Below are positions 5,201-64,000 of a stretch of 64,000 nucleotides of DNA, one piece after another. The stretch comes from Ophelia neglecta (taxonomy: Eukaryota). Under the pieces are notes generated by a model that was not told the origin of the DNA, ran no database searches, and was given only the letters and a program-made list of their open reading frames with translations. Position 1 is the stretch's first letter. The number at the start of each line of letters is the position of its first letter. The stretch is from the NCBI GenBank assembly GCA_965285935.1, contig OZ260667.1, forward strand, positions 55,304,001 through 55,368,000, given 5' to 3'. Both the position numbers and the translations under genes were made by a program.

Positions 5201-7719
5201 CAATTAATTGAAATATATGCTATTTTATTTTAGTTTAAAATTTTATACAGTTAAACAAAATTCCCTGTTCAGAATTTACAAATTATCAAAGTTTTTTTTT
5301 CAAAATTTGTCTATTTTCTGATTGAGGACTTAATTGTAAAGAAACATGACTGAGTTACAGAAGCTTGAATAAAATCAAAATAGCTTTAGTGCCAACATAC
5401 AGTATAAAAATACGGACAAATCCCTAAATTAACAAAAATTACTTTACTGACACAATAACAATGACCTAACTGATATGATAAATAGACTATTTATGTATAG
5501 ATCAATACTTGCGTTTTTACTAACCACACACCAGGTTTATTTTTAGAATCATAGGTAATTTTCAGTCATAGGTATTTCTCGGGCATGAGTATATAGGGTG
5601 TGCACTCAGTGGCTCTCCGGTGTCTACTTATAGTTTGGTTTAAATGCACTTTACCTTACCATCGTACTGATCAGTAACTTTAAAAGTGTGTACACTCCAA
5701 AATGTATCCTGTGTAGCGTGTAGCATAAAGAGGTAAAATTACTTATCATCACCTTGCAAGTTGTTTCCCGAGTTCAGCCCAGTGATTTTTCACAGGACCT
5801 CGCAATTGTACAAATTCCTCAACGAGAGCAGCGCCCCCACCCGGCACACTGATAACCTAAATTGTATAATCTCATCTTGTAAAGTTGCGAAGCGCAGTGG
5901 TTTATATCCATAAAGTAAAAGTATATACCATGCCTAGGTATCTGCTAGGTATCTTATATCCTTTGACTATTTGGATATATGGACAATGTCATGTCGAAAT
6001 ACATTTAGTGCAATCGTCAGCACATTAGCGGAGGATTGAGTATTTGTTGTGGTGTCCTCTTGTTCAATCCTTCCCAGCATGTTATATTTTATTTTACATG
6101 TACAATCAATACACTAACCTTAAATGGTATTGGACATCTGACAGTCTGGGTTCTATAAATAGCATCCAGACTAGCCCTTTCTCCCTCAAGCATCACATGA
6201 CCCTGTAATAGAAAAAATAACTTCTGCAATAACAACATATAAAACTAAAGCTAAAAGTCTTTTTTTTCACACGCCACGACTAAAAAACGCGTGTATGTAA
6301 TAGAGCTTCAGTTTAGCGGGGAGTTTCCCCATTCATTGTATGTGTATATCTTTGTAAACTTTAAAACAAGGCATATATGGGGACATTAGTTTCTAAACCA
6401 TGTAAATCTTTCATATTACAAGTGGAAATGTATATGTAATCAAGAAAAATTTCATACCTGTGCTGTCCAACTGACTTTAACGAAAACAAGACCGTTGTTT
6501 GTCCGGTAAACACGTCCGCCGCATATAACTCCGCCCTTTGCCAATCCCACAAATTCTATAGAGGGGGTTCTCAGTTCCTTTCGCAGTAAAAGTTCTAATC
6601 GTGCAAAGTCGGTGTCTGATCCCTTCACCCTTGAACCGTCCAACAATGGCATCGTCCTCTACAATTTGTAGGTTCAGTTCCACTGTGTACTAGTACTTTG
6701 GATTTAAACTTTAGTTTTAAAAGTACGTTTATGAGCTATAAAAAACAGAGGGCAGTTGAAGGAGTCACATTTGGACGGGAAATTTGGGTATTTCACATAG
6801 GTTTATCAATGAGGCCTCCCCCCCCCCTCCTACCCCACGCGGGTTACTTAGCATTTACCCTGGGCAACGTTTTTCCGCTGAAAGGCTTTGCTTTTCACAT
6901 GTTAGTATTTGGATGGGTCTATATTTGATCGATTTTGTATTTTGAAAGATCAGTAGTTCAGTTGTGGGGCACAAAAATATAAGAATATGTTACTGACAAA
7001 AATATGATGCTCTGACAACGATCCAGGATACGACTGCACTGCGGAAAACTCAACTTGTAGGTCCAAATTAAAGCATCAAAGTATCACCGCGTACTATCGT
7101 AACCTCGTCTTATTACATCAAGTGAACTATCAGCAGGGGGTCTATAATTGTCCCCTTCCCCTTAATAACTTAACTGTTCACTTTACTTGACACTGGCGGT
7201 AATACTACTCACTATTCATAAGGCATAGTGAACGATCCCTTCACAACTGACGACAGTTTATGATATCGTTGAGATGTAACGTTTTTTTATGAACATTCTC
7301 TTGTGAGCAAGTGTAGCGTTACTAGCCTTAAGCAGAGAGGCAAGGACAACGTGTTTTCTCACGATTGAGACGACATAGAAGCCAGAGATTAGCAAAGTAG
7401 TCTAGATTTCTTGTAATGCAGTAAAGATAACGATGATAATTGATGCAACTTACTTTGTTAGAGTAGATCTGTGAGAATTATTTATCAGAATTGAGTTTAA
7501 GTGTAGAGGGTTCCGGATCAGAGAGGGAACTTCCACTTGACACGTCTACATGTGATGACATTTACTATTGTTCTGAGGGACTATATCAGAAACTATTTAA
7601 TTGTATCTGCCTGTTCTGCTCTATAGTGGCAGTCTCCAACTCACCTGGGACTGTAGTGACACCTGTTGGCTGATTTAATCTATCTCTAAATACTGCTTAT
7701 TTGTGAATCCAAGTGTACA
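2226..7719. repeat. Segmental duplication unit A (contains FN3K-like paralog A)
   Basis: Colinear high similarity, including introns and flanks, to 10111-15682. Homology starts at CCTATTCGG..AGGACAAATAAACATT and ends at TCCAAGTGTACA. Confidence 0.92.
2783..6652 (-). CDS. FN3K: Fructosamine/ketosamine-3-kinase family protein, divergent paralog A (8 exons, 316 aa)
   Basis: Exons (minus strand): 6458-6652, 6119-6202, 5753-5856, 5053-5164, 4258-4311, 3945-4086, 3245-3416, 2783-2870. Total 951 nt, frame-consistent. All acceptors are AG; donors are GT except GC after exon 5. Motifs: LELLLRKELRT...GGRVY...[68 protein letters not shown]. Confidence 0.9.
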
Positions 7720-10110: not shown

Positions 10111-13100
10111 CCTATTCGGTAAGGACAAATAAACATTAATATCCGCTTTTGGTTTCTTAGCGTTCTTGATCTTCGTGAAAATTATGTTCTCCAACTACTC
10201 TTGAATTTTGTATGATAAAAAGTAACAGACGCGTTGGTCAAGGACAGATCAATAAAGAAGAATACGATTTCGAGAGAATGACTTTTGATTTTTCAAACGT
10301 TTCCCTTTTTTTCAAAATATAACTTTGAATAACCGAGCTTTTAATTGTGAATGAAATTTATGCTTATGCTTACCTGAACCAATTGATACACATTCGCAGC
10401 CTTTTTCCGATTCGCTTTTTGAATATCTTTATACATAGTGTTTTACACTATGTGGTTGAATATATTATTACTTATAGCTTCCTGAAGGGGTGTTATTATC
10501 ATACTAATAACACTCCACTCAACGACTGCAGAAATGGAGCATAACCCTAGGTCAATGGTCCGTTCAATCCACAAGAAACTTAACATATTAATAATGTACG
10601 AATAGCAAAAAACTTTCGAATTTCATGTGATCTTTTTCGTTTAAACATTTGTATTGTCACTTTGCGAACAGCACTGTTCTTGTTCTTAACTGTTATATTT
10701 TTGAAGAATCGCGGAGGACAGATGTGAGCTTCTGTAGTGTTCTCATGCTCCTCTCTTGGTGTTTATGGCCAAAATGATTCCTATAATGACAAAAAATCGA
10801 TATGACTAGAAACACAATTTCTGTCGCAAACAAATTAGTCAGTAGATGTTTGGACTTGTACAAACAAGCTAAGATAATGACAAACACTGTGATTAAAGAG
10901 CATCTTAATCCCATCTTAGTTTCCACCCTCTCGCAAAACTGTCGGGCAATGGTAAATTTCCTTAGGCACGAGTTATACAGGCATTTGAAATAAATATCCC
11001 AGAGTTTCTTAAATGTATTTTAATCAACTCTTCAAAATATGTTTCTTTGCAGGAGTAATATTAAACAAACAAATATTTGGAAATCCTCTATTAATGAAAT
11101 TGCCCTCATTTTACAATTCTGTGGCGCTACAAAGAACTTCATGTTTTTTAATATTTACCATTGGGTAATGTAATTAAATAGCTGGTAAAGAAGCCATCTG
11201 CCCTGCCATCCACGTTGACGGGGATTTAGTTGGTAATAGGCAGTAAATAATGCAGCATCGACATTGCTTGTTGCGGCGAAGGCCAGGTCATACTCGTCAT
11301 GTCCATAAAATGAAGCCGGATCAAATAACACTGTAAATAAAGAAGCCCAATAACCGGGTTTTTTTTTGATAGCCACTAAGTAAGTAACTATATTTGCCAC
11401 TTTCAGGACTTGTAGCACCCTATAAAAGAATCCATCAGACAAATGATTATCTATTCATTTGCTATTTTCATTACAGCTTGATTCACCGTTTGGGAACTGG
11501 GGATTAATGTATGTGGTCCTGCAGCTGATTATTTCGACCGAATTAATGACTATTTTTAAAGAAATGGATTTTCTTATTCTGTCAGGTATCCACTTTCATT
11601 TTAGTTTATACAAAATGTTAATATTTTAATCATCGGAAAGGACGGGAGTATATGACCGACGCTGAAGTAACATCAGCAATTAATGAAACCGTAGGACCGA
11701 TCACAGTATTGGCATAAGTTAGTTTAAGGGTGTTACCCTCCTTCTTGGGAAAGGCATCTTCATATGTGTTGCACAGTGCGGTTAGAACAGATAGATATTG
11801 TCTGTTGATTCTCTTCATACAGCGATTTGTAACATTTGTGCGATGTTTCTAGGTTACATACCAGGTCCTTCGGCCATATCAGCAACGTTGCCGGCCCACA
11901 TGTCCCCATGGATTAATGACGGTTTGACCTGTATGTCCTTGAACAGCAGTGGTAACCATGGCAGCAGTGGCGTCCACAGCTTCCGAAATTTACTAAATTT
12001 GAACTTCGAATAAAATGGACAAGTCATTTTAAAGAATTATCTTAAGCATGCTTTTAAAGAGACTAACTGGATATGAAAATCCCGTGTATACATTGGTTTT
12101 TCTAATAAATAAACACTTGACTTCAACAAAGGATTTTTGGATTTCGTAAAAGTGATGTGTTTAATAATACCGTGGGGGAAACCAATAAATATTTTGCTAA
12201 AATATTCTTCAACTTGCCTGTTTCTCCAAAAGCTGAATTTGTGGCTCCATCTTGACTTTGATAAAGAATTCCTAAAACACAATAAACACTTGTTAATGTA
12301 TTCAAATAAGTGTTTTCTTTTCTTCTATATCTGTAATATTATGTATTTGTGAAATGGGTGATTAGATAGGTGTGCCAGTTAAGATTACGGGTGTTGGGGA
12401 GTATAGAAATCAAGACGTTCGGAGGTTATAAAAGCTAAATAGTGCAGGAAGAATGAGCAAGTTGTTGGGTGGGACCTGATGTGCAGGGAGATTGGATGGT
12501 AAGTTGCATGTTGGGTTGTGCAGGTGATTAGGATAGATGGATAGGTGGACGAGGAGTGTAGCGAGATAAAAACCAAGGGAGAGAATACCCGACTGTCAAA
12601 CACAATCATTAATAGAAAACTTTCACCTTAGCCGGTCAAAATTCAAATGGGGAAAACGGAAGTTGATAATCAGCAGACAAATTTACATTATTCAACAAGA
12701 ATAGTCAATTAAATTGGTCTTCTCAATTGTCAGAATAAAAATGATGTCATTATCTTCGGCAACTAACAGCCGCTGCCTAACAGACGTATATCCACAATTC
12801 CCTAACAGTAAATAACAGTGAATCCGAATTTATTCAAAAAAATAAAATAAAATTAATATCACATGCTATAAAAAGTAAAAAGATCAGAGATTGCATTTGC
12901 GTAGGAGTTTTGGGGCAGAGGAATTACAAGGGTATAATATTAACATGGGTTTGGCCATATTGACGCATATTATTGACTTGTAGTCTAGTCTTTATATTGT
13001 TTTTCTAAATTAAACATTTAAGCTCACCAGCCAGCACTCCTCCCAAGTGTTGTCCTGCACGACCAGACCGTAACACGTAGGTACATTGAAACCAAACTTC

Positions 13101-15682
13101 TTCACAGGAAAGTTTTGTTGGCGGTTGTCGAGATGAAGTCTAGTTCGTTGTATCAAGGTTATCAAGGTTACCGCACAATTACTTGAAATATATGCTATTT
13201 TGTTATTTTAGTTTTAAAGTTTAACACAGTTGTAAAGAATTAACAAATTATCAAAGTTTTATTTTCAAAATTTGTCTATTTTCTGATTTAGGACTTAATT
13301 GTAAAGAAACATGACTAAGTTACAGAAGCTTGAATAAAATCAAAATAGCTTTAGTGCCAACATCCAGTATAAAAATACGGACAAATCCCTAAATTGACAA
13401 AAATTACTTTACTGACACAATAACAATGACCTAACTGATACGATAAATAGACTATTTATGTATAGATCAATACTTGCGGTTTTACTAACCACACACCAGG
13501 TTTATTTTTAGAATCATAGGTAATTTTCAGTCATAGGTATATCTCGGGCATGAGTATATAGGCAGTGCACTCAGTGGCTCTCCGGTGTCCACTTATAGTT
13601 TGGTTTGAATGCACTTTACCTTACCATCGTACTGATCAGTAACTTTAAAAGTGTGTACACTCCAAAATGTACTCAGTGTAAAGAGTGTTTCATAAAGAGG
13701 TAAAATTACTTGTCATCACCTTGCAAGTTGTTTCCCGAGTTCAGCCCAGTGATTTTTCACAGGACCTCGCAATTGTACAAATTCCTCGACGAGAGCAGCG
13801 CCCCCTCCAGGCACACTGATTACCTAAATTGTATAATCTCATCTTGTAAAGCTGCGAAGCGCAGTGGTTTATATCCATAAAGTAAAAGTATATACCATGC
13901 CTAGGTATCTGCTAGGTATCTTATATCCTTTGACTATTTTGATATATGGACAATGTCATGTCGAAAGACATTTAGTGCAATCGTCGGCACATTAGCGAAG
14001 GATTGAATATTTGTTGTGGTGTCCTCTTGTTCAATCCTTCTCAGCATGTTATATTTTATTTTACATGTACAATTAATACACTAACCTTAAATGGCATTGG
14101 ACATCTGACAGTCTGGGTTCTATAAATAGCATCCAGACTAGCCCTTTCTCCCTCAAGCATCACATGACCCTGTAATAGAAAAAATAACTTCTGCAATAAC
14201 AACATATAAAACTTAAGCTAAAAGTCATTTTTTTCACACGCCACGACTAAAAAACGCGTGTATGTAATAGAGCTTCAGTTTAGCGGGTAGTTTCCCCATT
14301 CATTGTATGTGTATATCTTTGTAAACTTTAGAACAAGGCATATATGGGGACATTAGTTTCTAAACCATGTAAACCTTTCATATTACAAGTAGAAATGTAT
14401 ATGTAATTAAGAAAAATTTCATACCTGTGCTGTCCAACTGACTTTAACGAAAACAAGACCGTTGTTTGTCCGGTAAACACGTCCGCCGCATATAACTCCG
14501 CCCTTTGCCAATCCCACAAATTCTATAGAGGGTGTTCTCAGTTCCTTTCGCAGTGAAAGTTCTAATCGTGCAAAGTCGGCGTCTGATCCCTTCACCCTTG
14601 AACCGTCCAACAATGGCATCGTCCTCTACAATTTGTAGGTTCAGTTCCACTATGTACTAGTACTTTGGATTTAAACTTTTAATTTTAAAAGTACGTTTAT
14701 GAGCTATAAAAAACAGAGAGCAGTTGAAGAAGTGACATTTAGAAGGGAAAATTTGGGTATTTCACATAGGATAGTTTATCAATGAGCCCCCCCCCCCTCC
14801 CACCCCACGCGGGTTACTCAGCATTTACCCTGGGCAACGTTGTTCCGCTGAAAAGGCTTTGGTTTTCACATGTTAGTATTTGGATGGGTCTATATTTGTT
14901 CGATTTTGTATTTTGAAAGATCAGTAGTTCAGTTGTGGGGCACAAAAAAATAAGAAAATGTTACTGACAAAAATATGATGCTCTGACAACTATCCAGGAT
15001 ACGACTGCACTGCGGAAAACTCAACTTGTAAATCCAAATTAAAGCATCAAAGTATCACCGCGTACTATCGTAACCTCGTCTTATCACACAAAGTGTACTA
15101 TCAGCAGGGGGTCTATTATTGTCCCCATCACCTTAATTACTTAACTATTCAATTTACTTGACACTGACGGTAATACTACTCTCTATTCATATGGAATAGT
15201 ATACGATCCCTTCACCACTAACGACAGCTGATGATATCGTTGAGATGTTAAGTTTTTTATGAACAGTCTCTTGTTAGCAAGTGAAGCGTAACTAGCCTTA
15301 AGCAGAGAGGCAAGGACAACGTGTTCTCTCACGATTGAAAGGATATAGAAACCAGAGATAAGCGAAGTAGTCTAGAGTTCTTGTAATGTAGTAAAGATAA
15401 CGATGATAATTGATGCAACTTACTTTGTTAGAGTAGATCTGTGAGAATCATTTATTAGAATTGACTTTAAGTGTAGAGGCTTCCGGAAAGGGAACTTCCA
15501 CTTGACACGTCTACATATGATGACATTTACTATTGTTCTGAGGGACTATATGTCAGACACTATTTAATAGTATCTGCCTGTTGTGCCCTATAGTGGCAGT
15601 CTCCAACTCACCTGGGACTGTAGTGACCCCTGTTGGCTGATTGAATCTCTAAATACTGCTTATTTTCGTATCCAAGTGTACA
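10111..15682. repeat. Segmental duplication unit B (contains FN3K-like paralog B)
   Basis: Near-identical to 2226-7719 with an offset of ~7.9 kb; small indels in introns. Confidence 0.92.
10693..14619 (-). CDS. FN3K: Fructosamine/ketosamine-3-kinase family protein, divergent paralog B (8 exons, 316 aa)
   Basis: Exons (minus strand): 14425-14619, 14086-14169, 13720-13823, 13028-13139, 12218-12271, 11862-12003, 11159-11330, 10693-10780. Exon sizes and splice sites match paralog A and the frame is open. About nine amino-acid differences from A counted by eye (e.g. LHLHN>LHLDN, NYLNQW>NYITQW). Confidence 0.88.
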
Positions 15683-50076: not shown

Positions 50077-53000
50077 TTACTTCAAGGCTTTATTCAGCGA
50101 TTTTAGAATAGAAATGGTACTTCCTCTGTATCCTCCACCAAAGTGGTTCCTGAAATAAAACCCAATAACTTCCTTATGAATTCATAACTTTTCTGTTAAT
50201 CAAACATATTTTACACTGGGACATGCTGGCAGCGCTACCGTTCGGAAATTCCTAGAAGCCATATGAATACAGTATTGATCTATTTTAAAATAAATTTAGA
50301 AATAGAACACAATAAATTCCTTATGAATTCATAACTTTTCTGTTAATTAAACATATTTTACACTGGGACATGCTGGCAGCACTACCGTTCGGAAATTCCT
50401 AGAAGCTATATGAATACAGTATTGATCTATTAAAAGCGCCTCCTGGTGTGAAACCAGTGTGACACTTCTGTGACACTGGAGTGAAACCAGTGTGTCACTA
50501 GTGTGTCACTAGTGTGATACTTGTGAGGCACTAGTGTGACACTAGTGTGATACTAGTGTGACACTAGTGTGTCACTTCAGCAAACTAGTGTGCTGCCATA
50601 CACTAAACATGCAAGTACACTAGCTAGTGGCACACTAGTGTAGCACTAAAAATGCTGTTCACTGATTGAAGCCTTTAACTAGATCACAAAGGTTAATACA
50701 AATAAAAGTAAAAATAACTATAGGATGCAAAAGATATCATTAATCTGCTCCAATAGATGAATAAAAACAGACACAGATTATGCTACATGCACATTACACA
50801 AACAATATTACTGTTATGGTGAAAATGTGTCAGCTGGTTTAAATTCACCTTTTAGAAAAAAAAATGACACTTAGCATTTTTTTTCAATTTTGTGCCTAGA
50901 GAAAATTAGGGATATATACATACATTCGAATATGATATTAACAAGTTTTAATTTCGGACCAAGCTGTTATTCGCCAAATTCTCTTATTTCAACAAATGCT
51001 AACATTTTTACCATTACAGTATCTGATGTATCAAGGTAGATAGAAAAATACACAAGGATTATTTAAAAGCTCTAATGGCAAATAAATCCACAAGTTTGGA
51101 CCTTGGTACAAAAAGTCTTACGGAATTGTTGTCCTGATAAAGTGTTCAAGTGGGCAATTTAAGGTAGACACTTTTCACATGCAGGAAGTTTACTCAGGAA
51201 TATACTGTCCACCAGGTGTCTGCACCAGTTTAGTTCGCAAAACACTACAGTAATTTTGTAGAGTAATAAACAAGATGAAGATATTAGCCATAAATTTTTA
51301 CTAATACTGAAAAAGTAATGATCTCCTAACTGTTAATGAAATTCCAGCTAAATTGGAAGGTACTGAGAGAAAAACTGGATGGTATAATATGATGACATTT
51401 TTGCTATTTTTATGCAATTGAGCACAATTTATTTGATTGAAAGCTGACGGTCAGGTATCTGCGTAGGTTGATATTGACTTAATTACTTGTCGGTCTTCTA
51501 ACTCATATTGCTCGTTTATGCTTATATGAATAATTCAGGTGGAATATTGTGGAGCCAAAAACAGATAATGTTGACAAACCTAAATATATTAAGCTATGGA
51601 ACCAAACAACGGTTTAGTGACTAATGGCTTTGCTTTGCCTGTCAGGTATAGACTTCTGTTTTCTTTAGATAAGGGACTTGCGCTAGTCATTACGATGATA
51701 GTATCCATCATTGGTAGACTAAATGGACAATGTCCTCACAATTTTCTTTTTAGTTCATAAAGAGCCATTGTTCTAACGACTGACTTTGTAATTGTAGATC
51801 AAGGTCAAACTTTTAAAGCAGCATCAATCTCCTGTACACATTTCACTATATAGTATGCTTCCAATACATTTTCATTTCCAAATGTTTTCCTAGAGGCAGA
51901 GATTAAGCAGTACATGGCATAGTGGTTTGACCTTAAAATTGTAGACCAAAGTTAACCATATTCTATTTCCTACATGCTTCAAATATCTTTCTTACCACTT
52001 TCTATCAAGAGAGAAAAATGAGAGAATTAAAGCGGGAAAAAGTACTTATTTTTGTCCTTTTTTTGCTTGTATGATCAACGTAATATTCTAGAGGTGTAAG
52101 ATTTGGAACATTTTGAAAATGAAAAAGATTAAACTGGATAGGGGCAGAACTCCCATAACACTGGCTGAAATAAGAAATCAAATCAAATCAAATACAAACC
52201 AGTGGTTAAGGAAGTGGTGAAGATAGTAGTACAAACCAGTGGTCAAGGTAGTGATGAATGTAGAAGTACAAACCAGTGGTTAAGGGAGTGATGAAAGTAG
52301 TAGTACAAACCAGTGGTTAAGGAAGTGGTGAAGATAGTAGTACAAACCAGTGGTCAAGGTAGTGATGAATGTAGAAGTACAAACCAGTGGTTAAGGGAGT
52401 GATGAAAGTAGTAGTACAAACCAGTGGTTAAGGTAGTGGGGAAGATAATAGTACAAACCAGTGGTCAAAGTAGTGGTGAAGATAGTATTACAAACCAGTG
52501 GTTAAGGTAGTGGTGAAGATAGTAGTACAAACCAGTGGTTAAGGAAGTGGTGAAGATAATAGTATAAACCAGTGGTTAAGGTAGTGGTGAAGATAATAGT
52601 ACAAACCAGTGGTTAAGGAAGTGGTGAATGTAGTAGTACAAACCAGTGGTTAAGGTAGTGGTGAAGGTAGTAGTACAAACCAGTGGTCAAGGTAGTGGTG
52701 AAGATAGTAGTACAAACCAGTGGTTAAGGAAGTGGTAAAGATAGTAGTACAATCCAGTGGTTAAGGAAGTGGTTAAGATAGTAGTACAAACCAGTGGTCA
52801 AGGTAGTGGTGAAGATAATAGTACAAACCAGTGGTTAAGGAAGTGGGGAAGGTAGTAGTACAAACCAGTGGTCAAGGTAGTGGTGAAGATAGTAGTACAA
52901 ACCAGTGGTTAAGGTAGTGGTGAAGATAGTAGTACAAACCAGTGGTTAAGGAAGTGGTAAAGATAGTAGTACAATCCAGTGGTTAAGGAAGTGGTTAAGA

Positions 53001-56000
53001 TAGTAGTACAAACCAGTGGTCATGGTAGTGGTGAAGATAATAGTACAAACCAGTGGTTAAGGAAGTGGTGAAGATAATAGTACAAACCAGTGGTTAAGGT
53101 AGTGGTGAAGGTAGTAGTACAAACCAGTGGTTAAGGTAGTGGTGAAGGTAGTAGTACAAACCAGTGGTCAAGGTAGTGGTGAAGATAGTAGTACAAACCA
53201 GTGGTTAAGGTAGTGGTGAAGGTAGTAGTACAAACCAGTGGTTAAGGAAGTGGTGAAGGTAGTAGTACAAACCAGTGGTTAAGGAAGTGGTGAAGATAGT
53301 ATTACAAACCAGTGGTTAAGGTAGTGGTGAAGATAGTAGTACAAACCAGTGGTTAAGGTAGTGGTGAAGGTAGTAGTACAAACCAGTGGTTAAGGTAGTG
53401 GTGAAGATAGTAGTACAAACCAGTGGTTAAGGAAGTGGTGAAGGTAGTAGTACAAACCAGTGGTTAAGGTAGTGGTGAAGGTAGTAGTATAAACCAGTGG
53501 TTAAGGAAGTGGTGAAGATAATAGTACAAACCAGTGGTCAAGGTAGTGGTGAAGGTAGTAGTATAAACCAGTGGTTAAGGTAGTAGTGAAGATAGTAGTA
53601 CAAACCAGTGGTTAAGGTAGTAGTGAAGGTAGTAGTACAAACCAGTGGTTAAGGAAGTGGTGAAGGTAGTAGTATAAACCAGTGGTTACGACAGTGATAA
53701 ACGTAGTGGTACAAACCAGTGGTTAAGGTAGTGGAAGAGCTGGTACAGCTCCAGCCTTTCCTTGTATCCTGGTTTCTTGGGGATCAGTTTATGGTAAGAT
53801 GAGAAGAATTGTGAAGAGAACCCTCCGAACATCTGTGCTATGGCCAAGTCGTACTCATCATGACCATAAAAGGAGGCAGGGTCAAACACAACTGCAGAGA
53901 AAAACATGAAATAGACATTAAGAAAGTATGGTGTTGATTTGTGGCTAATTTTCTTCCGATGATATAGTTCAAGGGTGGGTGTGTTGGGAAGCAGTCAGGG
54001 GAATTGTAGGTGAAGAGCGTGTATTGTTGTATTGACGTTGTGTGACTGTCGCAGGGGGGTACATTTTTGGCACCTGTGTGTGGGGGGAGGGAGGGGGGCG
54101 TGCTTGCTTATAGAGCCCATCATGTTAAAGGATGTCATAAATCTACAGCATCCTGTGTAGGGGAGTCAAGTATCATTAAATGGCTGTTGTGTGCTTTTTT
54201 ATGCACAATATTTCCAGGAAAATAGCTGGGTAAACCGCTGGAAAAGCAGCTGGGATTAGTGCAGCAAGTGGGCTGGCAGTAGACAGCCCAGTGTCAGGGA
54301 GCAGCTGGGAAACTGGAAGCACTGGAATTGGAGGGGAATTGGAGGGGAATGGCTGTTTGATCGACAAGACTTTCAGTTGCCACTGTATGGTCCTTATCCA
54401 CGAGACTTAACTCACCTGGCCCGTCATTTATCTCCGCTGCATTTCCTCCCCAGAGGTCGCCATGTAACAGCGATGGAATGACCTCAATGTCCTTGAACAG
54501 TTGTGGTAACTTAGGTAACAAACTGGTCCAGAGCGCTCTTGCTTCACTATCACGGTACTGCAATAAATAGAAATCAAAATATATATAAAAAGGAAAAGAT
54601 GAATAAAAAGCTTGTAGCCCCTGGTGCTACACTCACGCCTCTACTTGTATTGGTGTTCCTTCCTATAAAATCATAACCTTTCTGTCAGTGTTCGACTTTT
54701 CAAGTTAACTCATTCGGTCCTATGCCTTAACAGACTTTCCTATACAAGCAAAGGCAAAGGGACAGCAAAGGGACCTTTCAACAGATTGGGCAGTCAAAGA
54801 GTCAAGGGGAGGTGGGGGTGGGGGTGGGGGGGGTGGGAGGGCGCAGTTGGAAAGAAGTTTGGGGGGGGGGGGGGAGAGGGAGGTGCACAGACTAGGGTTG
54901 TAAGGTCAGAGTGCCACATTTAAGTTAACAGTAAATGAAATTCAATTAAACAAATGTCCAATCCTGAGTGACAAAAAATGAAGACTTTTGGTCATTTAAA
55001 AAGGCTGATCCCAAGGGTCAGAAGCCCCCCCCTCTCCTCTTAATACTACTACAGGTGACACACACAAACACAATATCAATACTACTCACCTCTTGTTCAA
55101 TCATGTCCAGCTGAGGTGTCAACTTATGCTGGGTGTAAAACTCCTGTAAAGAAAAAAAGCAAAAGCCTGAAGAAATTAACATACGAAACACAAATGGGGC
55201 AGAGGAGAGTGGGTGATGGGTGACTCCTTCCAGAAGGGATACTGACCAATCAAATGGACGTGGAGAGAGACCTAAAAAAGTTAACAATTCTACAGTAGTA
55301 TGATACTTTTTTCTTTTGCTTCTGTTTTCATTTTCATAGTGACACCTACCACTTTATCTGGAGAAACAACTTGTAAAAGTTAAATTCAATCCTTTTGGCT
55401 GGGAGTTGCCTGCTGCACTCTGTATTATTGTTGCAGGTTATTGGTGAAATAAATCTGTTGGTAGACACATATACAGCTTATAATAGACTGATGGTTGCTT
55501 GGAACCACAACACTACTCACATTGGTTGTTTTGTCATACTACTTTAAAGGATCCAAGTTGCTTACCAACCAATTTGTCTCCCATGTATTGGGCTGTGGGA
55601 TGAAACCACAACATGTGGGAATATGGAATCCAAAGCGAGGCTCAAACTCTCCGCCCTCTGATTGGTCAGTCTTGTGGACACTGCTGGACTGGGCTTCCTC
55701 TTTGTCTTTAAGAGACCGATTGTGGAGATGCAATCTGAAACCAAATTTCAGCTTAGATAATGTGAGATTATGCCAAAATAATATTACAAATCTTTTGTTT
55801 TTGGTCTGAAATATTTATCTGGTACATGCTGAAGAAATAGTTAGAGAGACTTTACCACTTCATTTTAAGTTTTCCATAATTTTGATGCCAATTAATTTTT
55901 CAATTAAACTAACATAAAGCAAGGTATGCCAGTTTGGGACATTTTTCCATATGCAATTTACATATTACTGCGCTGCACCCATACTCCTATATTAGCCCCT

Positions 56001-59000
56001 GCTCAGCCCCATACTCACTGGGCTAGTCGTGTTCCCAGATCCCCAGCATACTTCCTGTTCCTATATTAGCCCCTGCTCAGCCCCATACTCACTGGGCTAG
56101 TCGTGTTCCCAGATCCCCAGCACACTTCCTGTTCCTATATTAGCCCCTGCTCAGCCCCATACTCACTGGGCTAGTCGTGTTCCCAGATCCCCAGCATACT
56201 TCCTGTTCCTATATAAGCCCCTGCTCAGCCCAATACTCACTGGGCTAGTCGTGTTCCCAGATCCCCAGCACACTTCCTGTTCCTATATTAGCCCCTGCTC
56301 AGCCCCATACTCACTGGGCTAGTCATGTTCCCAGATCCCCAGCACACTTCCTGTTCCTATATTAGACCCTGCTCAGCCCCATACTCACTGGGCTAGTCGT
56401 GTTCCCAGATCCCCAGCACACTTCCTGTTCCTATATTAGACCCTGCTCAGCCCCATACTCACTGGGCTAGTCGTGTTCCCAGATCCCCAGCATACTTCCT
56501 GTTCCTATATTAGACCCTGCTCAGCCCCATACTCACTGGGCTAGTCATGTTCCCAGATCCCCTGCATACTTCCTGTTCCTATATTAGCCCCTGCTCAGCC
56601 CCATACCCACTGGGCTAGTCATGTTCCCAGATCCCCTGCATACTTCCTGTTCCTATATTAGCCCCTGCTCAGCCCCATACTCACAGGGCTAGTCGTGTTC
56701 CCAGATCAGCCCCTGCTCAGCCCCATACTCACTGGGCTAGTCATGTTCCCAGATCCCCTGCATACTTCCTGTTCCTATATTAGCCCCTGCTCAGCCCCAT
56801 ACTCTCTGGGCTAGTCGTGTTCCCTGATCAGCCCCTGCTCAGCCCCATACTCACTGGGCTAGTCGTGTTCCCAGATCAGCCCCTGCCCAGCCCCATACTC
56901 ACTGGGCTAGTCGTGTTCCCAGATCCCCTGCATACTTCCTGTTCCTATATTAGCCCCTGCTCAGCCCCATACTCACTGGGCTAGTCATGTTCCCAGATCC
57001 CCTGCATACTTCCTGTTCCTATATTAGCCCCTGCTCAGCCCCGTACTCACTGGGCTAGTCGTGTTCCCTGATCAGCCCCTGCTCAGCCCCATACTCTCTG
57101 GGCTAGTCGTGTTCCCTGATCAGCCCCTGCTCAGCCCCATACTCACTGGGCTAGTCGTGTTCCCAGATCAGCCCCTGCCCAGCCCCATACTCACTGGGCT
57201 AGTCGTGTTCCCAGATCCCCTGCATACTTCCTGTTCCTATATTAGCCCCTGCTCAGCCCCATACTTACTGGGCTAGTCATGTTCCCAGATCCCCTGCATA
57301 CTTCCTGTTCCTATATTAGCCCCTGCTCAGCCCCGTACTCACTGGGCTAGTCATGTTCCCAGATCAGCCCCTGCCCAGCCCCATATTCACTGGGCTAGTC
57401 ATGTTCCCAGATCCCCTGCATACTTCCTGTTCCTATATTAGCCCCTGCTCAGCCCCGTACTCACTGGGCTAGTCGTGTTCCCTGATCAGCCCCTGCTCAG
57501 CCCCATACTCTCTGGGCTAGTCTTGTTCCCTGATCAGCCCCTGCTCAGCCCCATACTCACTGGGCTAGTCGTGTTCCCAGATCAGCCCCTGCCCAGCCCC
57601 ATACTCACTGGGCTAGTCGTGTTCCCAGATCCCCTGCATACTTCCTGTTCCTATATGAGCCCCTGCTCAGCCCCATACTCACTGGGCTAGTCATGTTCCC
57701 AGATCCCCTGCATACTTCCTGTTCCTATATTAGCCCCTGCTCAGCCCCATACTCACTGGGCTAGTCGTGTTCCCAGATCCCCTGCACACTTCCTCTTCCT
57801 ATATTAGCCCCTGCTCAGCCCCATACTCACTGGGCTAGTGGTGTTCCCAGATCCCCAGCACACTTCCTGTTCCTATATTAGCCCCTGCTCAGCCCCATAC
57901 TCACTGGGCTAGTAATGTTCCCAGATCCCCTGCATACTTCCTGTTCCTATATTAGCCCCTGCTCAGCCCCATACTCTCTGGGCTAGTCATGTTCCCAGAT
58001 CCCCTGCATACTTCCTGTTCCTATATTAGCCCCTGCTCAGCCCCATACTCACTGGGCTAGTTGTGTTCCCAGATCAGCCCCTGCCCAGCCCCATACTCAC
58101 TGGGCTAGTCGTGTTCCCAGATCCCCTGCATACTTCCTGTTCCTATATTAGCCCCTGCTCAGCCCCATACTCACTGGGCTAGTCATGTTCCCAGATCCCC
58201 TGCATACTTCCTGTTCCTATATTAGCCCCTGCTCAGCCCCATACTCTCTGGGCTAGTCGTGTTCCCAGATTAGCCCCTGCTCAGCCCCGTACTCACTGGG
58301 CTAGTCATGTTCCCAGATCCCCAGCACACTTCCTGTTCCTATATTAGCCCCTGCTCAGCCCCATACTCACTGGGCTAGTGGTGTTCCCAGATCCCCTGCA
58401 TACTTCCTGTTCCTATATTAGCCCCTGCCCTGCCCCATACTCACTGGGCTAGTCGTGTTCCCAGATCCCCTGCATACTTCCTGTTCCTATATTAGCCCCT
58501 GCCCTGCCCCATACTCACTGGGCTAGTCGTGTTCCCAGATCCCCAGCACACTTCCTGTTCCTATATTAGCCCCTGCTCAGCCCCATACTCACTGGGCTAG
58601 TGGTGTTCCCAGATCCCCTGCATACTTCCTCTTCCTATATTAGCCCCTGCTCAGCCCCATACTCACTGGGCTAGTCATGTTCCCAGGTCCCCTGCATACT
58701 TCCTCTTCCTATATTAGCCCCTGCTCAGCCCCATACTCACTGGGCTAGTCGTGTTCCCAGATCCCCAGCACACTTCCTGTTCCTATATTAGCCCCTGCTC
58801 AGCCCCATACTCACTGGGCTAGTCATGTTCCCAGGTCCCCTGCATACTTCCTGTTCCTATATTAGCCCCTGCTCAGCCCCATACTCACTGGGCTAGTGGT
58901 GTTCCCAGATCCCTTGCACACTTCCTGTTCCTATATTAGCCCCTGCTCAGCCCCATACTCACTGGGCTAGTCGTGTTCCCAGATCATCCCCTGCTCAGCC

Positions 59001-62000
59001 CCATACTCACTGGGCTAGTCGTGTTCCCAGATCCCCAGCACACTTCCTGTTCCTATATTAGCCCCTGCTCAGCCCCATACTCACTGGGCTAGTAATGTAC
59101 CCAGAACCCCTGCATACTTCCTGTTCCTATATTAGACCCTGCTCAGCCCCATACTCACTGGGCTGGTCGTGTTCCCAGATCCCTTGCATACTTCCTGTTC
59201 CTATATTAGCCCCTGCTCAGCCCCATACTCACTGGGCTAGTCGTGTTCCCAGATCCCCTGCATACTTCCTGTTCCTATATTAGCCCCTGCTCAGCCCCAT
59301 ACTCACTGGGCTAGTCGTGTTCCCAGATCCCCTGCATACTTCCTGTTCCTATATTAGCCCCTGCTCAGCCCCATACTCACTGGGCTAGTCGTGTTCCCAG
59401 ATCCCCTGCATACTTCCTGTTCCTATATTAGCCCCTGCTCAGCCCCATACTCTCTGGGCTAGTCATGTTCCCAGATCCCCTGCATACTTCCTGTTCCTAT
59501 ATTAGCCCCTGCTCAGCCCCATACTCACTGGGCTAGTCGTGTTCCCAGATCAGCCCCTGCCCAGCCCCATACTCACTGGGCTAGTCGTGTTCCCAGATCC
59601 CCTGCATACTTCCTGTTCCTATATTAGCCCCTGCTCAGCCCCATACTCACTGGGCTAGTCATGTTCCCAGATCCCCTGCATACTTCCTGTTCCTATATTA
59701 GCCCCTGCTCAGCCCCATACTCTCTGGGCTAGTCGTGTTCCCAGATTAGCCCCTGCTCAGCCCCGTACTCACTGGGCTAGTCATGTTCCCAGATCCCCAG
59801 CACACTTCCTGTTCCTATATTAGCCCCTGCTCAGCCCCATACTCACTGGGCTAGTGGTGTTCCCAGATCCCCTGCATACTTCCTGTTCCTATATTAGCCC
59901 CTGCCCTGCCCCATACTCACTGGGCTAGTCGTGTTCCCAGATCCCCTGCATACTTCCTGTTCCTATATTAGCCCCTGCCCTGCCCCATACTCACTGGGCT
60001 AGTCGTGTTCCCAGATCCCCAGCACACTTCCTGTTCCTATATTAGCCCCTGCTCAGCCCCATACTCACTGGGCTAGTGGTGTTCCCAGATCCCCTGCATA
60101 CTTCCTCTTCCTATATTAGCCCCTGCTCAGCCCCATACTCACTGGGCTAGTCATGTTCCCAGGTCCCCTGCATACTTCCTCTTCCTATATTAGCCCCTGC
60201 TCAGCCCCATACTCACTGCGCTAGTCGTGTTCCCAGATCCCCAGCACACTTCCTGTTCCTATATTAGCCCCTGCTCAGCCCCATACTCACTGGGCTAGTC
60301 ATGTTCCCAGGTCCCCTGCATACTTCCTGTTCCTATATTAGCCCCTGCTCAGCCCCATACTCACTGGGCTAGTGGTGTTCCCAGATCCCTTGCACACTTC
60401 CTGTTCCTATATTAGCCCCTGCTCAGCCCCATACTCACTGGGCTAGTCGTGTTCCCAGATCATCCCCTGCTCAGCCCCATACTCACTGGGCTAGTCGTGT
60501 TCCCAGATCCCCAGCACACTTCCTGTTCCTATATTAGCCCCTGCTCAGCCCCATACTCACTGGGCTAGTAATGTACCCAGAACCCCTGCATACTTCCTGT
60601 TCCTATATTAGACCCTGCTCAGCCCCATACTCACTGGGCTGGTCGTGTTCCCAGATCCCTTGCATACTTCCTGTTCCTATATTAGCCCCTGCTCAGCCCC
60701 ATACTCACTGGGCTAGTCGTGTTCCCAGATCCCCTGCATACTTCCTGTTCCTATATTAGCCCCTGCTCAGCCCCATACTCACTGGGCTAGTCGTGTTCCC
60801 AGATCCCCTGCATACTTCCTGTTCCTATATTAGCCCCTGCTCAGCCCCATACTCACTGGGCTAGTAATGTTCCCAGGTCCCCTGCATACTTCCTCTTCCT
60901 ATATTAGCCCCTGCTCAGCCACATACTCACTGGGCTAGTCGTGTTCCCAGATCCCCAGCACACTTCCTGTTCCTATATTAGCCCCTGCTCAGCCCCATAC
61001 TCACTGGGCTAGTAATGTTCCCAGGTCCCCTGCATACTTCCTCTTCCTATATTAGCCCCTGCTCAGCCCCATACTCACTGGGCTAGTCGTGTTCCCAGAT
61101 CAGCCCCTGCCCAGCCCCATACTCACTGGGCTAGTCATGTTCCCAGATCCCCAGCACACTTCCTGTTCCTATATTAGCCCCTGCTCAGCCCCATACTCAC
61201 TGGGCTAGTCATGTTCCCAGGTCCCCTGCATACTTCCTCTTCCTATATTAGCCCCTGCTCAGCCCCATACTCACTGGGCTAGTCATGTTCCCAGATCCCC
61301 AGCACACTTCCTGTTCCTATATTAGCCCCTGCTCAGCCTCATACTCACTGGGCTAGTCGTGTTCCCAGATCATCCCCTGCTCAGCCCCATACTCACTGGG
61401 CTAGTCGTGTTCCCAGATCCCCTGCATACTTCCTGTTCCTATATTAGCCCCTGCCCTGCCCCATACTCACTGGGCTAGTCGTGTTCTCAGATCCCCTGCA
61501 TACTTCCTGTTCCTATATTAGCCCCTGCTCAGCCCCATACTCACTGGGCTAGTCGTGTTCCCAGATCCCCTGCATACTTCCTGTTCCTATATTAGCCCCT
61601 GCTCAGCCCCATACTCACTGGGCTAGTGGTGTTCCCAGAACCCCTGCATACTTCCTGTTCCTATATTAGCCCCTGCTCAGCCCCATACTCACTGGGCTAG
61701 TGGTGTTCCCAGATCCCCTGCATACTTCCTGTTCCTATATTAGCCCCTGCTCAGCCCCATACTCACTGGGCTAGTGGTGTTCCCAGATCCCCTGCATACT
61801 TCCTGTTCCTATATTAGCCCCTGCTCAGCCCCATACTCACTGGGCTAGTCGTGTTCCCAGATCCCCTGCATACTTCCTGTTCCTATATTAGCCCCTGCTC
61901 AGCCCCATACTCACTGCGCTAGTCGTGTTCCCAGATCCCCAGCACACTTCCTGTTCCTATATTAGCCCCTGCTCAGCCCCATACTCACTGGGCTAGTCGT

Positions 62001-64000
62001 GTTCCCAGATCCCCAGCACACTTCCTGTTCCTATATTAGCCCCTGCTCAGCCCCATACTCACTGGGCTAGTCGTGTTCCCAGATCCCCAGCACACTTCCT
62101 GTTCCTATATTAGCCCCTGCTCAGCCCCATACTCACTGGGCTAGTCGTGTTCCCAGATCCCCAGCACACTTCCTGTTCCTATATTAGTCCCTGCTCAGCC
62201 CCATACTCACTGGGCTGGTCGTATTCCCAGATCAGCCCCTGCTCAGCCCCATACTCACTGGGCTAGTCGTGTTCCCAGATCCCCTGCATACTTCCGGAGG
62301 CCTGACAGGTCTAAATACTCAGTCACTAGCATGGCTCCTCCAATGGGATTGTCCAACACCTGCATACCATGTAAAATAATACAATTAATGAACTCTCTCC
62401 ATATTTATATTCACAGTATTGTTTACTACCTTTAGTTCATAGGCATTAATATTTGCTTATTTTCACATGGAGCATATCTGAAGCTGTTTAATAATGCATT
62501 CTGTGTCTGGCGATGAATATCTTCGGATTTTTGTGTAGTTGTGAAAATGAGTCTGAAAAGTAGTAAAGATTTAAATCCTAGCGTAGGTGGAGAGTGCTAA
62601 TACCAAATAAAGCTAGGACCTTGCAGAGGTAAACAGTGGTACAACTATTCACAACACTATACTAAGATGGTGGGTGACAAGGCCACGCTTAAAAATATTC
62701 TCTTTGCGGGTAACAGGCCCCCAAAAAATCCATAAGGTCGGTAGGAAATAATTTTTTTTTATGAGTGGGGTGGCAGCACTTCCTATATTCCATATTAAAG
62801 CAAATATAACATGATAAGTAACTGAGAGACGAGGGGGTTTATGGGTATGTCATCATTGTTCGTTTAAAAAACTTCTTATGTTGCATCAGATGTTCGAATA
62901 TAACCCGTGAAAACATCAAAAAAAAAACACAAGGAAAAAAGCGTCCTTCGCCATCATTTTGCAGTCGTCTCCCGCCATCATTTTGTCAGTCGACTGATCG
63001 GCAAACTGCGTCTATTCATATTACACGGCGAGTACTACCGAAGTTTACCGAACACCGTTGGAATCCCAAACATTCTTTGGCAATAAATTTTTGTGCTGCA
63101 AAAGAATCTTGACATTAGATCTAATAGTCCAAACTGTAAATTAGCAGCAAGCATTCAAGTGGGAAGATGGGTGAATTGCGGCTTTGCTCACAGCGAGCGG
63201 CAATATAATTGAAGTAGTATGAGTTTTGCTAACTGCAGTTCTGTTTTCCCAATCGGGGGAGCCGAACAAGCCTAGCCATATCTTTACTGGTAGACTTCGT
63301 ATCGTCAAAATTACATCATTTCAAGGACGATTTGAGCTTGAAAATGTTTTTTTCTGAATCGAAAAAAATTATGTCTATGCAGGAGGTTTGGACACCATAC
63401 GGCTGGGTTACCCGCAACGAGAATATTTTTAAGACTGGCCCAATTTAACGCTCCAAATCCACAATAGATTGATGGGGAGCAGTTCCCGCCATATTTTCAG
63501 GGGCAAAAACCGCTCTCGAAATAATTCCCTATCCAGCCTGGTTGACAGAGTACCCTCTATGCTACTTAACTATATCCTGTATACTACTTAATGCTCCAAC
63601 TTATCTGTGAGTATGGTGAAAGTGCAATAAAAGAAGCAGTATTATAGGTAGTGGCATAGTTATGTACTTGATAAGTGAAGTAAAATTGGAATCAGTAATT
63701 CGCTGAAGAACACAAGTTAATTTGTTATAAAACAAAGCCCTTGAAGCCAATGTGTAGGCTGCAGCCCCCCCCCCCCCCTGCATAAATACAAACTTATCTC
63801 TTCCTTCGAGACTTGTATTGAAAAGCTTACAGTGGATGCTCTTCTTCTTCCGTGTCAGGGAAAATGAGAAATTAATATAGAAAATATATGTTTTAAACCA
63901 CTATAAACATAAGAATTTATTTCTTACCATGATGGGTTTGGGACACCAGACTGTGTCTGTCTTATACATGGCTTCCAAGCTGGCAAATTCTCCATCAAAC
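50077..64000 (-). CDS. FN3KRP: Ketosamine-3-kinase / FN3K-related protein, conserved copy; 5' end lies beyond the window
   Basis: Exons (minus strand): >64000-63928 ([24 protein letters not shown]), 62259-62359 ([24 protein letters not shown]), 55566-55734 ([16 protein letters not shown]), 55090-55143, 54416-54557 ([12 protein letters not shown]), 53717-53891 ([34 protein letters not shown]), 50077-50149 ([24 protein letters not shown]). All introns are GT-AG with consistent phases, at the same positions as in paralogs A/B. Confidence 0.93.
50152..50432. repeat. 147-bp tandem duplication abutting the last acceptor site
   Basis: TCCTTATGAATTCATAACTTTTCTG at 50171 and 50318; two near-identical copies. 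Confidence 0.9.
50447..50645. repeat. 11-bp minisatellite (ACTAGTGTGAC-like, semi-palindromic)
   Basis: Repeated CACTAGTGTG/GTGTCACTA motifs. Confidence 0.75.
52193..53734 (-). repeat. 37-bp tandem array (~40 copies) derived from the FN3K exon 7/intron 7 donor junction
   Basis: Sense unit TACTATCTTCACCACTACCTTAACCACTG|GTTTGTAC. The real junction at 53717/53716 reads CTCTTCCACTACCTTAACCACTG|GTTTGTAC. Confidence 0.95.
55985..62295 (-). repeat. 74-bp/48-bp tandem array (~6.3 kb, roughly 90 units) derived from the FN3K exon 3/intron 3 donor junction
   Basis: Sense unit GGAAGTATGCAGGGGATCTGGGAACACGACTAGCCCA|GTGAGTATGGGGCTGAGCAGGGGCTAATATAGGAACA. The first 37 nt are identical to the end of exon 62259-62359. 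Confidence 0.97.
62681..63440. mobile_element. 760-bp PIF/Harbinger-like non-autonomous transposon in FN3K intron 2
   Basis: TIR GGCCACGCTTAAAAATATTCTCTTTGCGGGTAAC / GTTACCCGCAACGAGAATATTTTTAAGACTGGCC, flanked by a CAA 3-bp duplication. Confidence 0.85.

What the first reader, a model, noticed from the sequence alone, without database searches (positions are those of the whole stretch)
52193..62359. Splice-donor satellites: two introns of one gene are independently filled with tandem copies of their own exon-end/5' splice site
Seen: the arrays at 55985-62295 and 52193-53734 are unrelated in sequence but share one architecture. Each monomer is the 3' end of the upstream coding exon, the intact donor (CA|GTGAGT or TG|GTTTGT) and the first intron bases. 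The terminal copy is the real exon junction, and the array extends only into the intron. Over a hundred donor copies result, nearly all with GT intact. The homologous introns in paralogs A/B have no arrays. Inference: two such events in one gene suggest something that targets donor junctions. Candidates are a mutational process (co-transcriptional R-loop or slippage at the donor, or repair templated by splicing intermediates) or retention of U1-binding decoy arrays that tune expression or suppress premature polyadenylation. A survivorship explanation also fits, because duplications across a donor leave the protein intact as long as the first donor is used. I cannot tell whether this pattern has already been described in this lineage.
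Basis: partly seen in the sequence, partly recalled or inferred. Interest (0 to 1): 0.9.

Follow-up and report, generated by a model that had tools for sequence, protein, structure and literature searches.

The report
Splice-junction minisatellites in a kinase gene
Two introns of a fructosamine-3-kinase gene each begin with a long tandem array grown from a duplicated exon end plus splice donor; such arrays are real but already known (amphioxus "mirages", human F7 and IFI6), and I found similar arrays at more than 15 other places in this genome.

Summary
On the minus strand lies an intact 8-exon fructosamine-3-kinase gene. Intron 3 starts with 92 copies of CCA|GTGAGT (units of 74 or 48 nt, 6.3 kb). 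Intron 7 starts with 42 copies of CTG|GTTTGT (37-nt units, 1.5 kb). In each array the first copy is the true exon junction. The two units are unrelated and occur nowhere else in the genome. Paralogs A and B have the same introns without arrays.

The architecture is not new. Minisatellites whose first unit spans an exon-intron boundary are described in human F7, 6-16/IFI6, CBS, LMNB2 and PDGF, and as "mirages" in amphioxus. The scan also met it elsewhere in this genome (GOPC, s1-734120).

I found it at more than 15 other loci. Several of those genes also hold two such arrays. Acceptor junctions are amplified too (Pellino and Tudor exons).

Decoy donor bases vary at the same rate as other unit positions, so selection for decoys is not supported. 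Arrays with consensus donors are about 2-5 times more frequent per locus than composition-matched controls. The copy-level excess is not robust.

Best reading: slippage-born, unequal-exchange-expanded, tolerated junction minisatellites. Donor usage could not be tested, because no RNA runs exist.

The parts
63928..64000 (-). Exon 2 of the fructosamine-3-kinase gene (gene C). It runs off the window. Donor is ATG|GTAAGA. Exon 1, with the ATG, lies about 700-840 nt beyond the window end.
   Evidence: tblastx to paralogs; sequence; exon 1 ORF in L023
62259..62359 (-). Exon 3 ([34 protein letters not shown]). It ends CCA| in phase 2. The authentic donor GT is at 62258-62257.
   Evidence: The join to exon 4 (CA+A = Q, then LHLHN) matches paralogs A and B.
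55985..62295 (-). Array 1: 92 copies of exon end plus donor. Units are 74 nt (37 exon + 37 intron) or a 48-nt deletion form. The first unit overlaps exon 3 (62259-62295). The coding strand is G-rich (38% G, 17% C). Higher-order blocks of 21 units (1476 bp).
   Evidence: Unique to this locus. High word depth in reads.
55735..55984 (-). Unique 3' part of intron 3, up to the acceptor tttcag|.
55566..55734 (-). Exon 4 ([13 protein letters not shown]...[24 protein letters not shown]). Donor is TTG|GTAAGC.
55090..55143 (-). Exon 5 ([18 protein letters not shown]). Donor is GAG|GTGAGT.
54416..54557 (-). Exon 6 (contains [10 protein letters not shown]). Donor is CAG|GTGAGT.
53717..53891 (-). Exon 7 ([24 protein letters not shown]...[11 protein letters not shown]). 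It ends CTG| in phase 2. The weak authentic donor GTTTGT starts at 53716.
   Evidence: Pfam PF03881, E 2.4e-23; solved FN3K structures, E 2e-24
52193..53734 (-). Array 2: 42 copies of exon end plus donor, all 37 nt apart. The first unit overlaps exon 7 (53717-53734). The unit next to the real donor is the most diverged. Higher-order blocks of 3 and 6 units (111 and 222 bp). The last, partial unit ends GTTTGTA.
   Evidence: Unique to this locus.
50150..52192 (-). Rest of intron 7. It holds an 11-nt array (50446-50576) and a 147-nt duplication (50152-50431) that ends 2 nt before the acceptor AG.
50077..50149 (-). Coding part of exon 8 (G + [23 protein letters not shown] + stop).
2869..6187 (-). 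Paralog A, exons 2 to 8. Used as a comparator: same intron positions, no arrays.
10779..14154 (-). Paralog B, exons 2 to 8. Used as a comparator: same intron positions, no arrays.

Best explanation
Both arrays are locus-born minisatellites of the exon-intron-boundary type ('mirages').

Inferred origin: in each case a short tandem duplication arose across the junction, from -37 to +37 in intron 3 and about 37 nt around the exon 7 donor. It probably came from slippage between short direct repeats. Candidates are GGAAGTATG in exon 3 against GGAGTATGG just past the array, and TGTAC in exon 7 against TGTA at +4 of the intron.

Shown: the arrays then grew by unequal exchange or replication slippage in single units and in multi-unit blocks.

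Inferred from the human F7 work, not tested here: they persist because they cost little. The complete exon with its own donor stays first in line, and the splicing machinery takes the most upstream of a run of identical donors.

Shown: any transcript that used a decoy would carry an in-frame stop at once (CAG TGA after exon 3; ten codons after exon 7). Inferred: such transcripts would be degraded.

The arrays need no function. At most they cost some expression through unproductive splicing. Two in one gene reflects how common such arrays are in this array-rich genome, where they cluster in certain genes.
For: Anatomy and register. Units are found only at this locus. The exon parts are ancestral: exon 7 is conserved to solved FN3K structures and in the paralogs, and the introns are shared with paralogs A and B, which lack arrays. 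Higher-order blocks are present: identity peaks at lag 21 units/1476 bp and at lag 6 units/222 bp. The edge unit of array 2 is the most diverged, as expected for unequal exchange. Decoy donor positions carry 6 of 44 variant types against 7.1 expected, p = 0.84. There are in-frame stops right after both real donors. The same architecture sits at other genes of this genome: Dynein_C, dynein AAA_7 and MTPAP-like exons, rhodanese (weak), and an atlastin-like ORF recognised from memory. It also occurs at acceptors: Pellino_FHA and TUDOR exons. Precedent and the first-donor rule: PMC1557585. 'Mirages' that do not disturb splicing: PMC3087553, PMC3902484.
Against: No RNA data exist for this organism in the runs on offer. 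Use of the first donor, silence of the decoys and expression of the gene are therefore all inferred. Ninety-one decoys share 74 nt of context with a near-consensus donor, and the last decoy lies only about 285 nt from the acceptor. An intron-definition system might prefer that one. Arrays with consensus donors are about 2-5 times more frequent per locus than three control motifs on contigs C1 and C2 (at least 19 against 4, 8 and 9). This leaves room for a junction bias that plain random placement does not explain. The proposed microhomologies are short and were found by eye.
Confidence: 0.7

Rival explanations
1. Splice junctions are preferred sites of minisatellite birth or growth in this genome. 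The cause would be a mutational process tied to transcription or splicing, such as polymerase pausing or R-loops at junctions, or repair templated by RNA. The FN3K arrays would be two products of it.
For: Periodic consensus donors (MAGGTRAGT three times, 10-40 nt apart) occur at 19 or more loci on C1 and C2. Three control motifs of the same composition occur at 4, 8 and 9 loci there. The motif itself is only 1.15 times as common as its mirror genome-wide. At least 12 of the 19 arrays sit on real or plausible exon ends. Second junction arrays were found within 4 kb in 4 of 8 genes inspected. The coding strand of array 1 is strongly G-rich.
Against: At copy level one control motif (MGTAGRGAT) gave 1262 matches against 1272 for the donor. 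These counts are therefore driven by a few large arrays. The genes concerned have short introns once the arrays are removed, and random placement then already puts about 4-15% of arrays across a donor. For gene C the figure is 3.7-7.4% per array. Flanks of the inspected loci are crowded with ordinary intronic arrays, and some belong to dispersed families. General array-proneness of certain regions could therefore explain the clustering. Both donor and acceptor junctions are hit, so nothing is donor-specific. No unbiased genome sample could be drawn.
Confidence: 0.17
2. The decoy donors are kept by selection as U1-binding arrays. They would tune expression through unproductive splicing or protect the long introns from premature polyadenylation.
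For: GT is intact in 123 of 132 decoys. Counted per cell, the donor 9-mer shows fewer mismatches than the rest of the unit: 1.4% against 3.0% in array 1 and 1.7% against 6.5% in array 2. [quoted passage not shown]
Against: The per-cell counts are inflated by a few old variants inherited by many units. Counted as variant types, donor positions equal the rest (6 of 44 against 7.1 expected, p = 0.84). Low-frequency variants are, if anything, denser in the array 1 donor. T+2 is itself changed in 9 decoys. Paralogs A and B lack arrays. Without the arrays the introns would be short, so there would be nothing to protect. The same architecture occurs in unrelated genes and at acceptors.
Confidence: 0.07
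3. The arrays, or their sizes, are assembly artefacts.
For: Long, highly uniform tandem arrays are hard to assemble. The only runs on offer come from one sample, possibly the one that was assembled.
Against: Short-read contigs show word depths of 60-990 over the arrays against 6-30 in flanking unique sequence. Contigs cross the distal edge of array 2 and join an array unit to exon 3. No contig skips an array. Unit phase is perfectly regular, with structured higher-order variants.
Confidence: 0.03

Closest known systems
'Mirage' minisatellites of amphioxus (Adh3, troponin C, globins BflGb6/9, PGBD5)
   Same: Tandem repeats that span an exon-intron boundary and so reiterate splice signals. They are locus-specific and occur at 5' and 3' boundaries. 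They are reported not to disturb normal splicing. They show concerted evolution inside the cluster, with the edge units left out (PMC3087553, PMC3902484). All the structural points were seen here.
   Different: The published cases have a few to some tens of units. Here there are 92 and 42 units, filling 96% and 43% of the introns, and another locus (L019) has at least 133. The organism of this window is not identified. Contigs of 76-150 Mb do not look like Branchiostoma chromosomes (my own recollection), so this may be another lineage. Splicing and length instability were not testable here.
Human F7 intron 7 37-bp VNTR and similar minisatellites in 6-16/IFI6, CBS, LMNB2 and PDGF
   Same: The first monomer spans the exon-intron boundary, so the authentic donor is followed by identical pseudo-donors. 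In F7 only the most upstream donor is used, by 5'-to-3' scanning, and downstream ones fire only if the upstream ones are mutated (PMC1557585). This supplies the mechanism of tolerance proposed here.
   Different: Copy numbers there are 5-25. The F7 unit carries only 4 exon nt, against 37 and at least 18 here. In 6-16 and CBS the first two pseudo-sites are used in frame; here any decoy use gives a stop. Nothing has been tested experimentally for this gene.
Intron gain by tandem duplication across AG|GT (Rogers model; 'mirage' model of new globin introns)
   Same: A tandem duplication that includes splice signals, and an intron filled with repeats derived from exon sequence.
   Different: Introns 3 and 7 are old: paralogs A and B have them at the same position and phase. 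The arrays therefore enlarged existing introns and did not create them.
G-rich hypervariable minisatellites (CEB1, CEB25 type)
   Same: Array 1 has strong strand asymmetry and 357 runs of GGG or longer on one strand. It shows variant-unit structure and block duplications.
   Different: Only 14 canonical G-quadruplex motifs with loops up to 7 nt. Array 2 is C/T-rich on the same strand, so the two arrays share no composition rule.

Membership tests
Exon-intron boundary minisatellite ('mirage' / F7-IVS7 type) | Head-to-tail tandem array of a constant unit | tested here: met
   TRF. Spacing is only 74 or 48 nt in array 1 and only 37 nt in array 2.
Exon-intron boundary minisatellite ('mirage' / F7-IVS7 type) | The unit holds the exon end, the splice site and the intron start, and the terminal unit is the authentic junction | tested here: met
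   Array 1 unit: 37 nt of exon 3 plus GTGAGT and following bases. Array 2 unit: at least 18 nt of exon 7 plus GTTTGT and following bases. The first unit is continuous with the full exon in both.
Exon-intron boundary minisatellite ('mirage' / F7-IVS7 type) | Local origin: the unit is not a dispersed repeat, and the exon part is ancestral coding sequence | tested here: met
   Own-genome DNA search finds each unit only at this locus. Exon 7 matches PF03881 and solved FN3K structures. Paralogs share the exons and introns but not the arrays.
Exon-intron boundary minisatellite ('mirage' / F7-IVS7 type) | The authentic (most upstream) donor is used and the pseudo-sites are silent or minor | not testable with these tools
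   No RNA run holds the locus. The one read-laying run used DNA contigs.
Exon-intron boundary minisatellite ('mirage' / F7-IVS7 type) | Length polymorphism or instability of the array | tested here: inconclusive
   Short-read contigs collapse the arrays. The sample is heterozygous in flanking sequence, but array alleles cannot be resolved. Higher-order blocks show past unequal exchange.
Selected U1-decoy / splicing-regulatory array | Donor bases conserved above the rest of the unit | tested here: not met
   Variant types in the donor 9 nt: 6 of 44 against 7.1 expected, p = 0.84. The per-cell excess of conservation rests on a few inherited variants.
Selected U1-decoy / splicing-regulatory array | Presence at the homologous junction in related genes or species | tested here: not met
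   Absent from paralogs A and B. No junction array in the further paralog loci L024-L026. Orthologs in other species could not be examined.
Dispersed or transposon-borne minisatellite family | The same unit at several unlinked loci | tested here: not met
   One locus each. By contrast, a 51-nt unit and a 31-34-nt unit are each shared between two fetched loci.
Intron created by tandem duplication (Rogers model) | The intron is absent from relatives that lack the duplication | tested here: not met
   Paralogs A and B have both introns at the same codon and phase.

The most novel reading that the evidence does not exclude
In this genome exon-intron junctions, donors above all, are true hot spots for the birth or growth of minisatellites. 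A transcription- or splicing-coupled mutational process would cause this. It would explain why perhaps a thousand or more junctions carry arrays and why single genes so often carry two.
Probability: 0.17. Interest if true: 0.75.

Novelty: new member of a known kind. Interest (0 to 1): 0.4.

Why it matters
On its own, the locus is one more case of a known curiosity. Its value lies in scale. Ninety-one decoys share 74 nt of context with a near-consensus donor. The last decoy sits about 285 nt from the acceptor. This is an extreme natural test of how a spliceosome picks the first of many equal donors, far beyond the 5-25 pseudo-sites studied in human genes.

The genome as a whole looks rich in such arrays at both kinds of junction. 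With RNA data and an annotation it could show whether junctions are mutational hot spots or only tolerated sites. It could also show how much gene expression is lost to decoy splicing.

For annotators, these arrays are a practical hazard. Gene finders may pick a wrong donor or call repeat 'exons'.

Tried and rejected
1. RNA evidence. The look-up of sequencing runs gave only three runs of one sample, none on record as RNA, so donor usage could not be tested.
2. Identifying the organism. The look-up of encoding contigs held no record. The protein atlas returned only bacterial fragment clusters. The lineage stays unknown.
3. Copy-level enrichment of periodic donors (1272 against 137 for the mirror) looked strong at first. 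I rejected it as proof when a further control motif reached 1262. Only locus counts are used.
The background rate therefore rests on the window, its neighbours and the biased flanks.
5. The idea that the 74-nt unit is an older 37-nt duplication: 19 of 37 identical, but 5.5% of shuffles do as well. Dropped.
6. The 2002 paper that named 'mirages' is not held. It is cited only through PMC3087553 and PMC3902484.
8. A mistyped coordinate gave one failed Pfam call.
Full report
**What is there**

The window is G000:C12:55304001-55368000 of a 762-Mb animal genome.

On the minus strand between 50077 and the window end lies an intact fructosamine-3-kinase gene.
- Exon 7 matches Pfam PF03881 at E 2.4e-23 and solved FN3K structures at E 2e-24.
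- Exons 2 to 8 were placed by comparison with two paralogs in the same window and by reading the junctions.
- Exon 1, with the start codon, lies just beyond the window.
- All exons are open and keep family motifs.
They were searched one at a time by reference.

**The arrays**

Array 1:
- Anchoring on the donor gives 92 copies of CCA|GTGAGT, spaced only 74 nt (72 times) or 48 nt (19 times).
- The 74-nt unit is the last 37 nt of exon 3 followed by the first 37 nt of the intron.
- The 48-nt form is an internal deletion.
- The first copy is the real junction (donor G at 62258).
- The last unit runs into 250 nt of unique intron before the acceptor.

Array 2:
- It has 42 copies of CTG|GTTTGT, all 37 nt apart.
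- The first is the real junction at 53716.
- The array ends about 2 kb before exon 8.

Both arrays:
- GT is intact in 123 of 132 decoys.
- The two units are unrelated.
- Each occurs only here in the genome.
- Paralogs A and B have both introns at the same codon and phase, a few hundred nt long, without arrays.
- The exon sequences and the introns are therefore old and the arrays are young and local.

**Are they real DNA?**

The only public runs that hold the locus are three runs of one sample, kept as short-read contigs.
- Laid on 52100-58099, they give word depths of 6-30 over unique sequence and 60-990 over the arrays.
- One contig joins an array unit to exon 3.
- One contig crosses the distal edge of array 2.
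- No contig skips an array.

This supports many copies but cannot confirm the exact numbers. The sample may be the one that was assembled.

**How the arrays evolved**

- Unit identity peaks at a lag of 21 units (1476 bp) in array 1, and at 3 and 6 units (111 and 222 bp) in array 2. This is the mark of multi-unit unequal exchange.
- The unit next to the real donor of array 2 is the most diverged, as expected at array edges.
- Short direct repeats flank both founding units. GGAAGTATG at exon -37 pairs with GGAGTATGG just past array 1. TGTAC in exon 7 pairs with TGTA at +4 of intron 7. These suggest slippage as the origin; this is inference.

**Are the decoys selected?**

- Counted per cell, the donor 9-mer looks better kept than the rest of the unit. 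That measure is driven by a few old variants carried by many units.
- Counted as variant types, donor positions hold 6 of 44 against 7.1 expected (p = 0.84).
- Recent low-frequency variants are not rarer there.
- T+2 is changed to A in nine decoys.
- Reading through either real donor meets a stop at once (CAG TGA) or after ten codons. Any decoy use would give a truncated, probably degraded, message.

**What is known**

- PMC1557585 states that several human genes (F7, 6-16, CBS, LMNB2, PDGF) hold minisatellites whose first monomer spans an exon-intron boundary, so that the donor is reiterated in the intron.
- The same paper shows for F7 that only the most upstream donor is used, by a 5'-to-3' scanning rule.
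- PMC3087553 and PMC3902484 describe the same thing in amphioxus genes under the name 'mirages'. There it occurs at 5' and 3' boundaries, without aberrant mRNAs, and with concerted evolution that leaves out the edge units.
- The FN3K arrays meet every structural criterion of this class.
- The two functional criteria (first donor used, length instability) could not be tested.
- Another agent of this scan reached the same verdict for two arrays in GOPC of this genome (s1-734120). I did not examine that locus.

**Is there a bias toward donors?**

Pattern counts:
- MAGGTRAGT three times, 10-40 nt apart, gives 1272 matches genome-wide against 137 for its mirror.
- The single motif is only 1.15 times as common as its mirror.
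- Further controls of the same composition gave 290, 407, 222 and 1262.
- The copy-level excess is therefore not robust.

Locus counts on contigs C1 and C2:
- Donor-motif arrays number at least 19, against 4, 8 and 9 for three controls.

Inspection of the 19 loci:
- Three arrays follow exons with Pfam matches over the curated cut-off: Dynein_C, dynein AAA_7 and an MTPAP-like palm.
- One follows an exon with a weak rhodanese match.
- Others follow open frames preceded by good acceptors.
- Five or six remain unclear.

Other findings:
- In the flanks of eight loci I found four more donor-junction arrays in the same genes. These are a second one in the dynein gene (Dynein_C exon), a second in an atlastin-like gene, a second in a coiled-coil gene, and a donor array sharing an intron with an acceptor array.
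- The atlastin call rests on my recollection of the protein. Pfam gave no significant match.
- Acceptor-junction arrays are real too: 36 units before a Pellino FHA exon and 17 before a Tudor exon.

What this means:
- The phenomenon is widespread, is not donor-specific, and clusters in certain genes.
- Whether junctions are hit more often than chance depends on the null model.
- With array-free intron lengths, a random 37-74-nt duplication in gene C spans a donor with probability 3.7-7.4%.
- In the compact genes inspected the figure may reach 10-15%.
- The flanks are crowded with ordinary arrays.
- I therefore rate a junction-biased mutational process as possible (about one in six) but not required.

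**Verdict**

- The best explanation is a pair of tolerated boundary minisatellites, a new and very large member of a known kind.
- The untested step is splicing: no RNA was available.

Noticed in passing
window 50152-50431 (minus strand): A 147-nt tandem duplication (1.9 copies, 95% alike) ends 2 nt before the acceptor AG of exon 8. The upstream copy reads tatttcta where the real site reads tatttcag. Three of the four tandem repeats in this gene therefore touch a splice junction.
   Followed up: partly
window 28355-30903: A 2.5-kb array of about 50-nt units with complex higher-order periods (88, 266, 405). On the minus strand the unit holds GGTAAC/GGTAAT motifs. I recognised no gene next to it.
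   Followed up: no
L001 (G000:C1:7845500-7855400): Two consecutive exons of a dynein heavy chain (both match Dynein_C) are each followed by a donor-junction array: 84 nt x 7 and about 45 nt x 62. The second has a variable G-run.
   Followed up: yes
L002 (G000:C1:8488000-8495500): An atlastin-like gene carries two donor-junction arrays 2.7 kb apart (23 nt x 7 and 47 nt x 6). The gene name is from memory; Pfam was silent.
   Followed up: partly
L019 (G000:C2:117396500-117406400): A donor-junction array of at least 133 units of 43 nt (more than 5.7 kb; it runs off the locus) follows a short open exon. Two further arrays lie just upstream.
   Followed up: partly
L020, L021, L022: These are acceptor-junction arrays, with intron end plus exon start repeated and the last copy real. 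They lie before a Pellino FHA exon (43 nt x 36), a Tudor exon (36 nt x 17) and a membrane-segment exon. In L022 the same intron also starts with a 42-nt array that carries GAG|GTAAGA.
   Followed up: yes
L018 5193-6000 and L022 2340-3650; L015 2495-2862 and L020 2339-2824: Two minisatellite families recur at unlinked loci: a 51-nt unit, and a 31-34-nt unit (GGGCAGCACCACTGAGAATGGTTCTA...). They are probably carried by mobile elements, unlike the junction arrays.
   Followed up: no
genome-wide: The arbitrary control motif MGTAGRGAT occurs 1262 times in triple periodic form. Some large array or array family carries it, and I did not locate it.
   Followed up: no
window 53756-55709 in reads: The sequenced sample is highly heterozygous. 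One contig differs from the assembly at 9 of 332 positions, and there is a 5-nt indel at 54645.
   Followed up: no
G000:C12:55270733-55315334 and C1:115805297: Fructosamine-kinase-like exons mark at least five tandem paralogs on C12 and one on C1. Paralogs A and B are only 50-56% identical to gene C in exon 7, with a changed segment (AAT-SNVDAA).
   Followed up: no
window 19547-20536 (-), 42833-43960 (+), 37343-37681 (-): Two intronless ORFs of 330 and 376 aa look like seven-helix receptors, judged by eye. A reverse-transcriptase-like fragment lies between the kinase paralogs.
   Followed up: no
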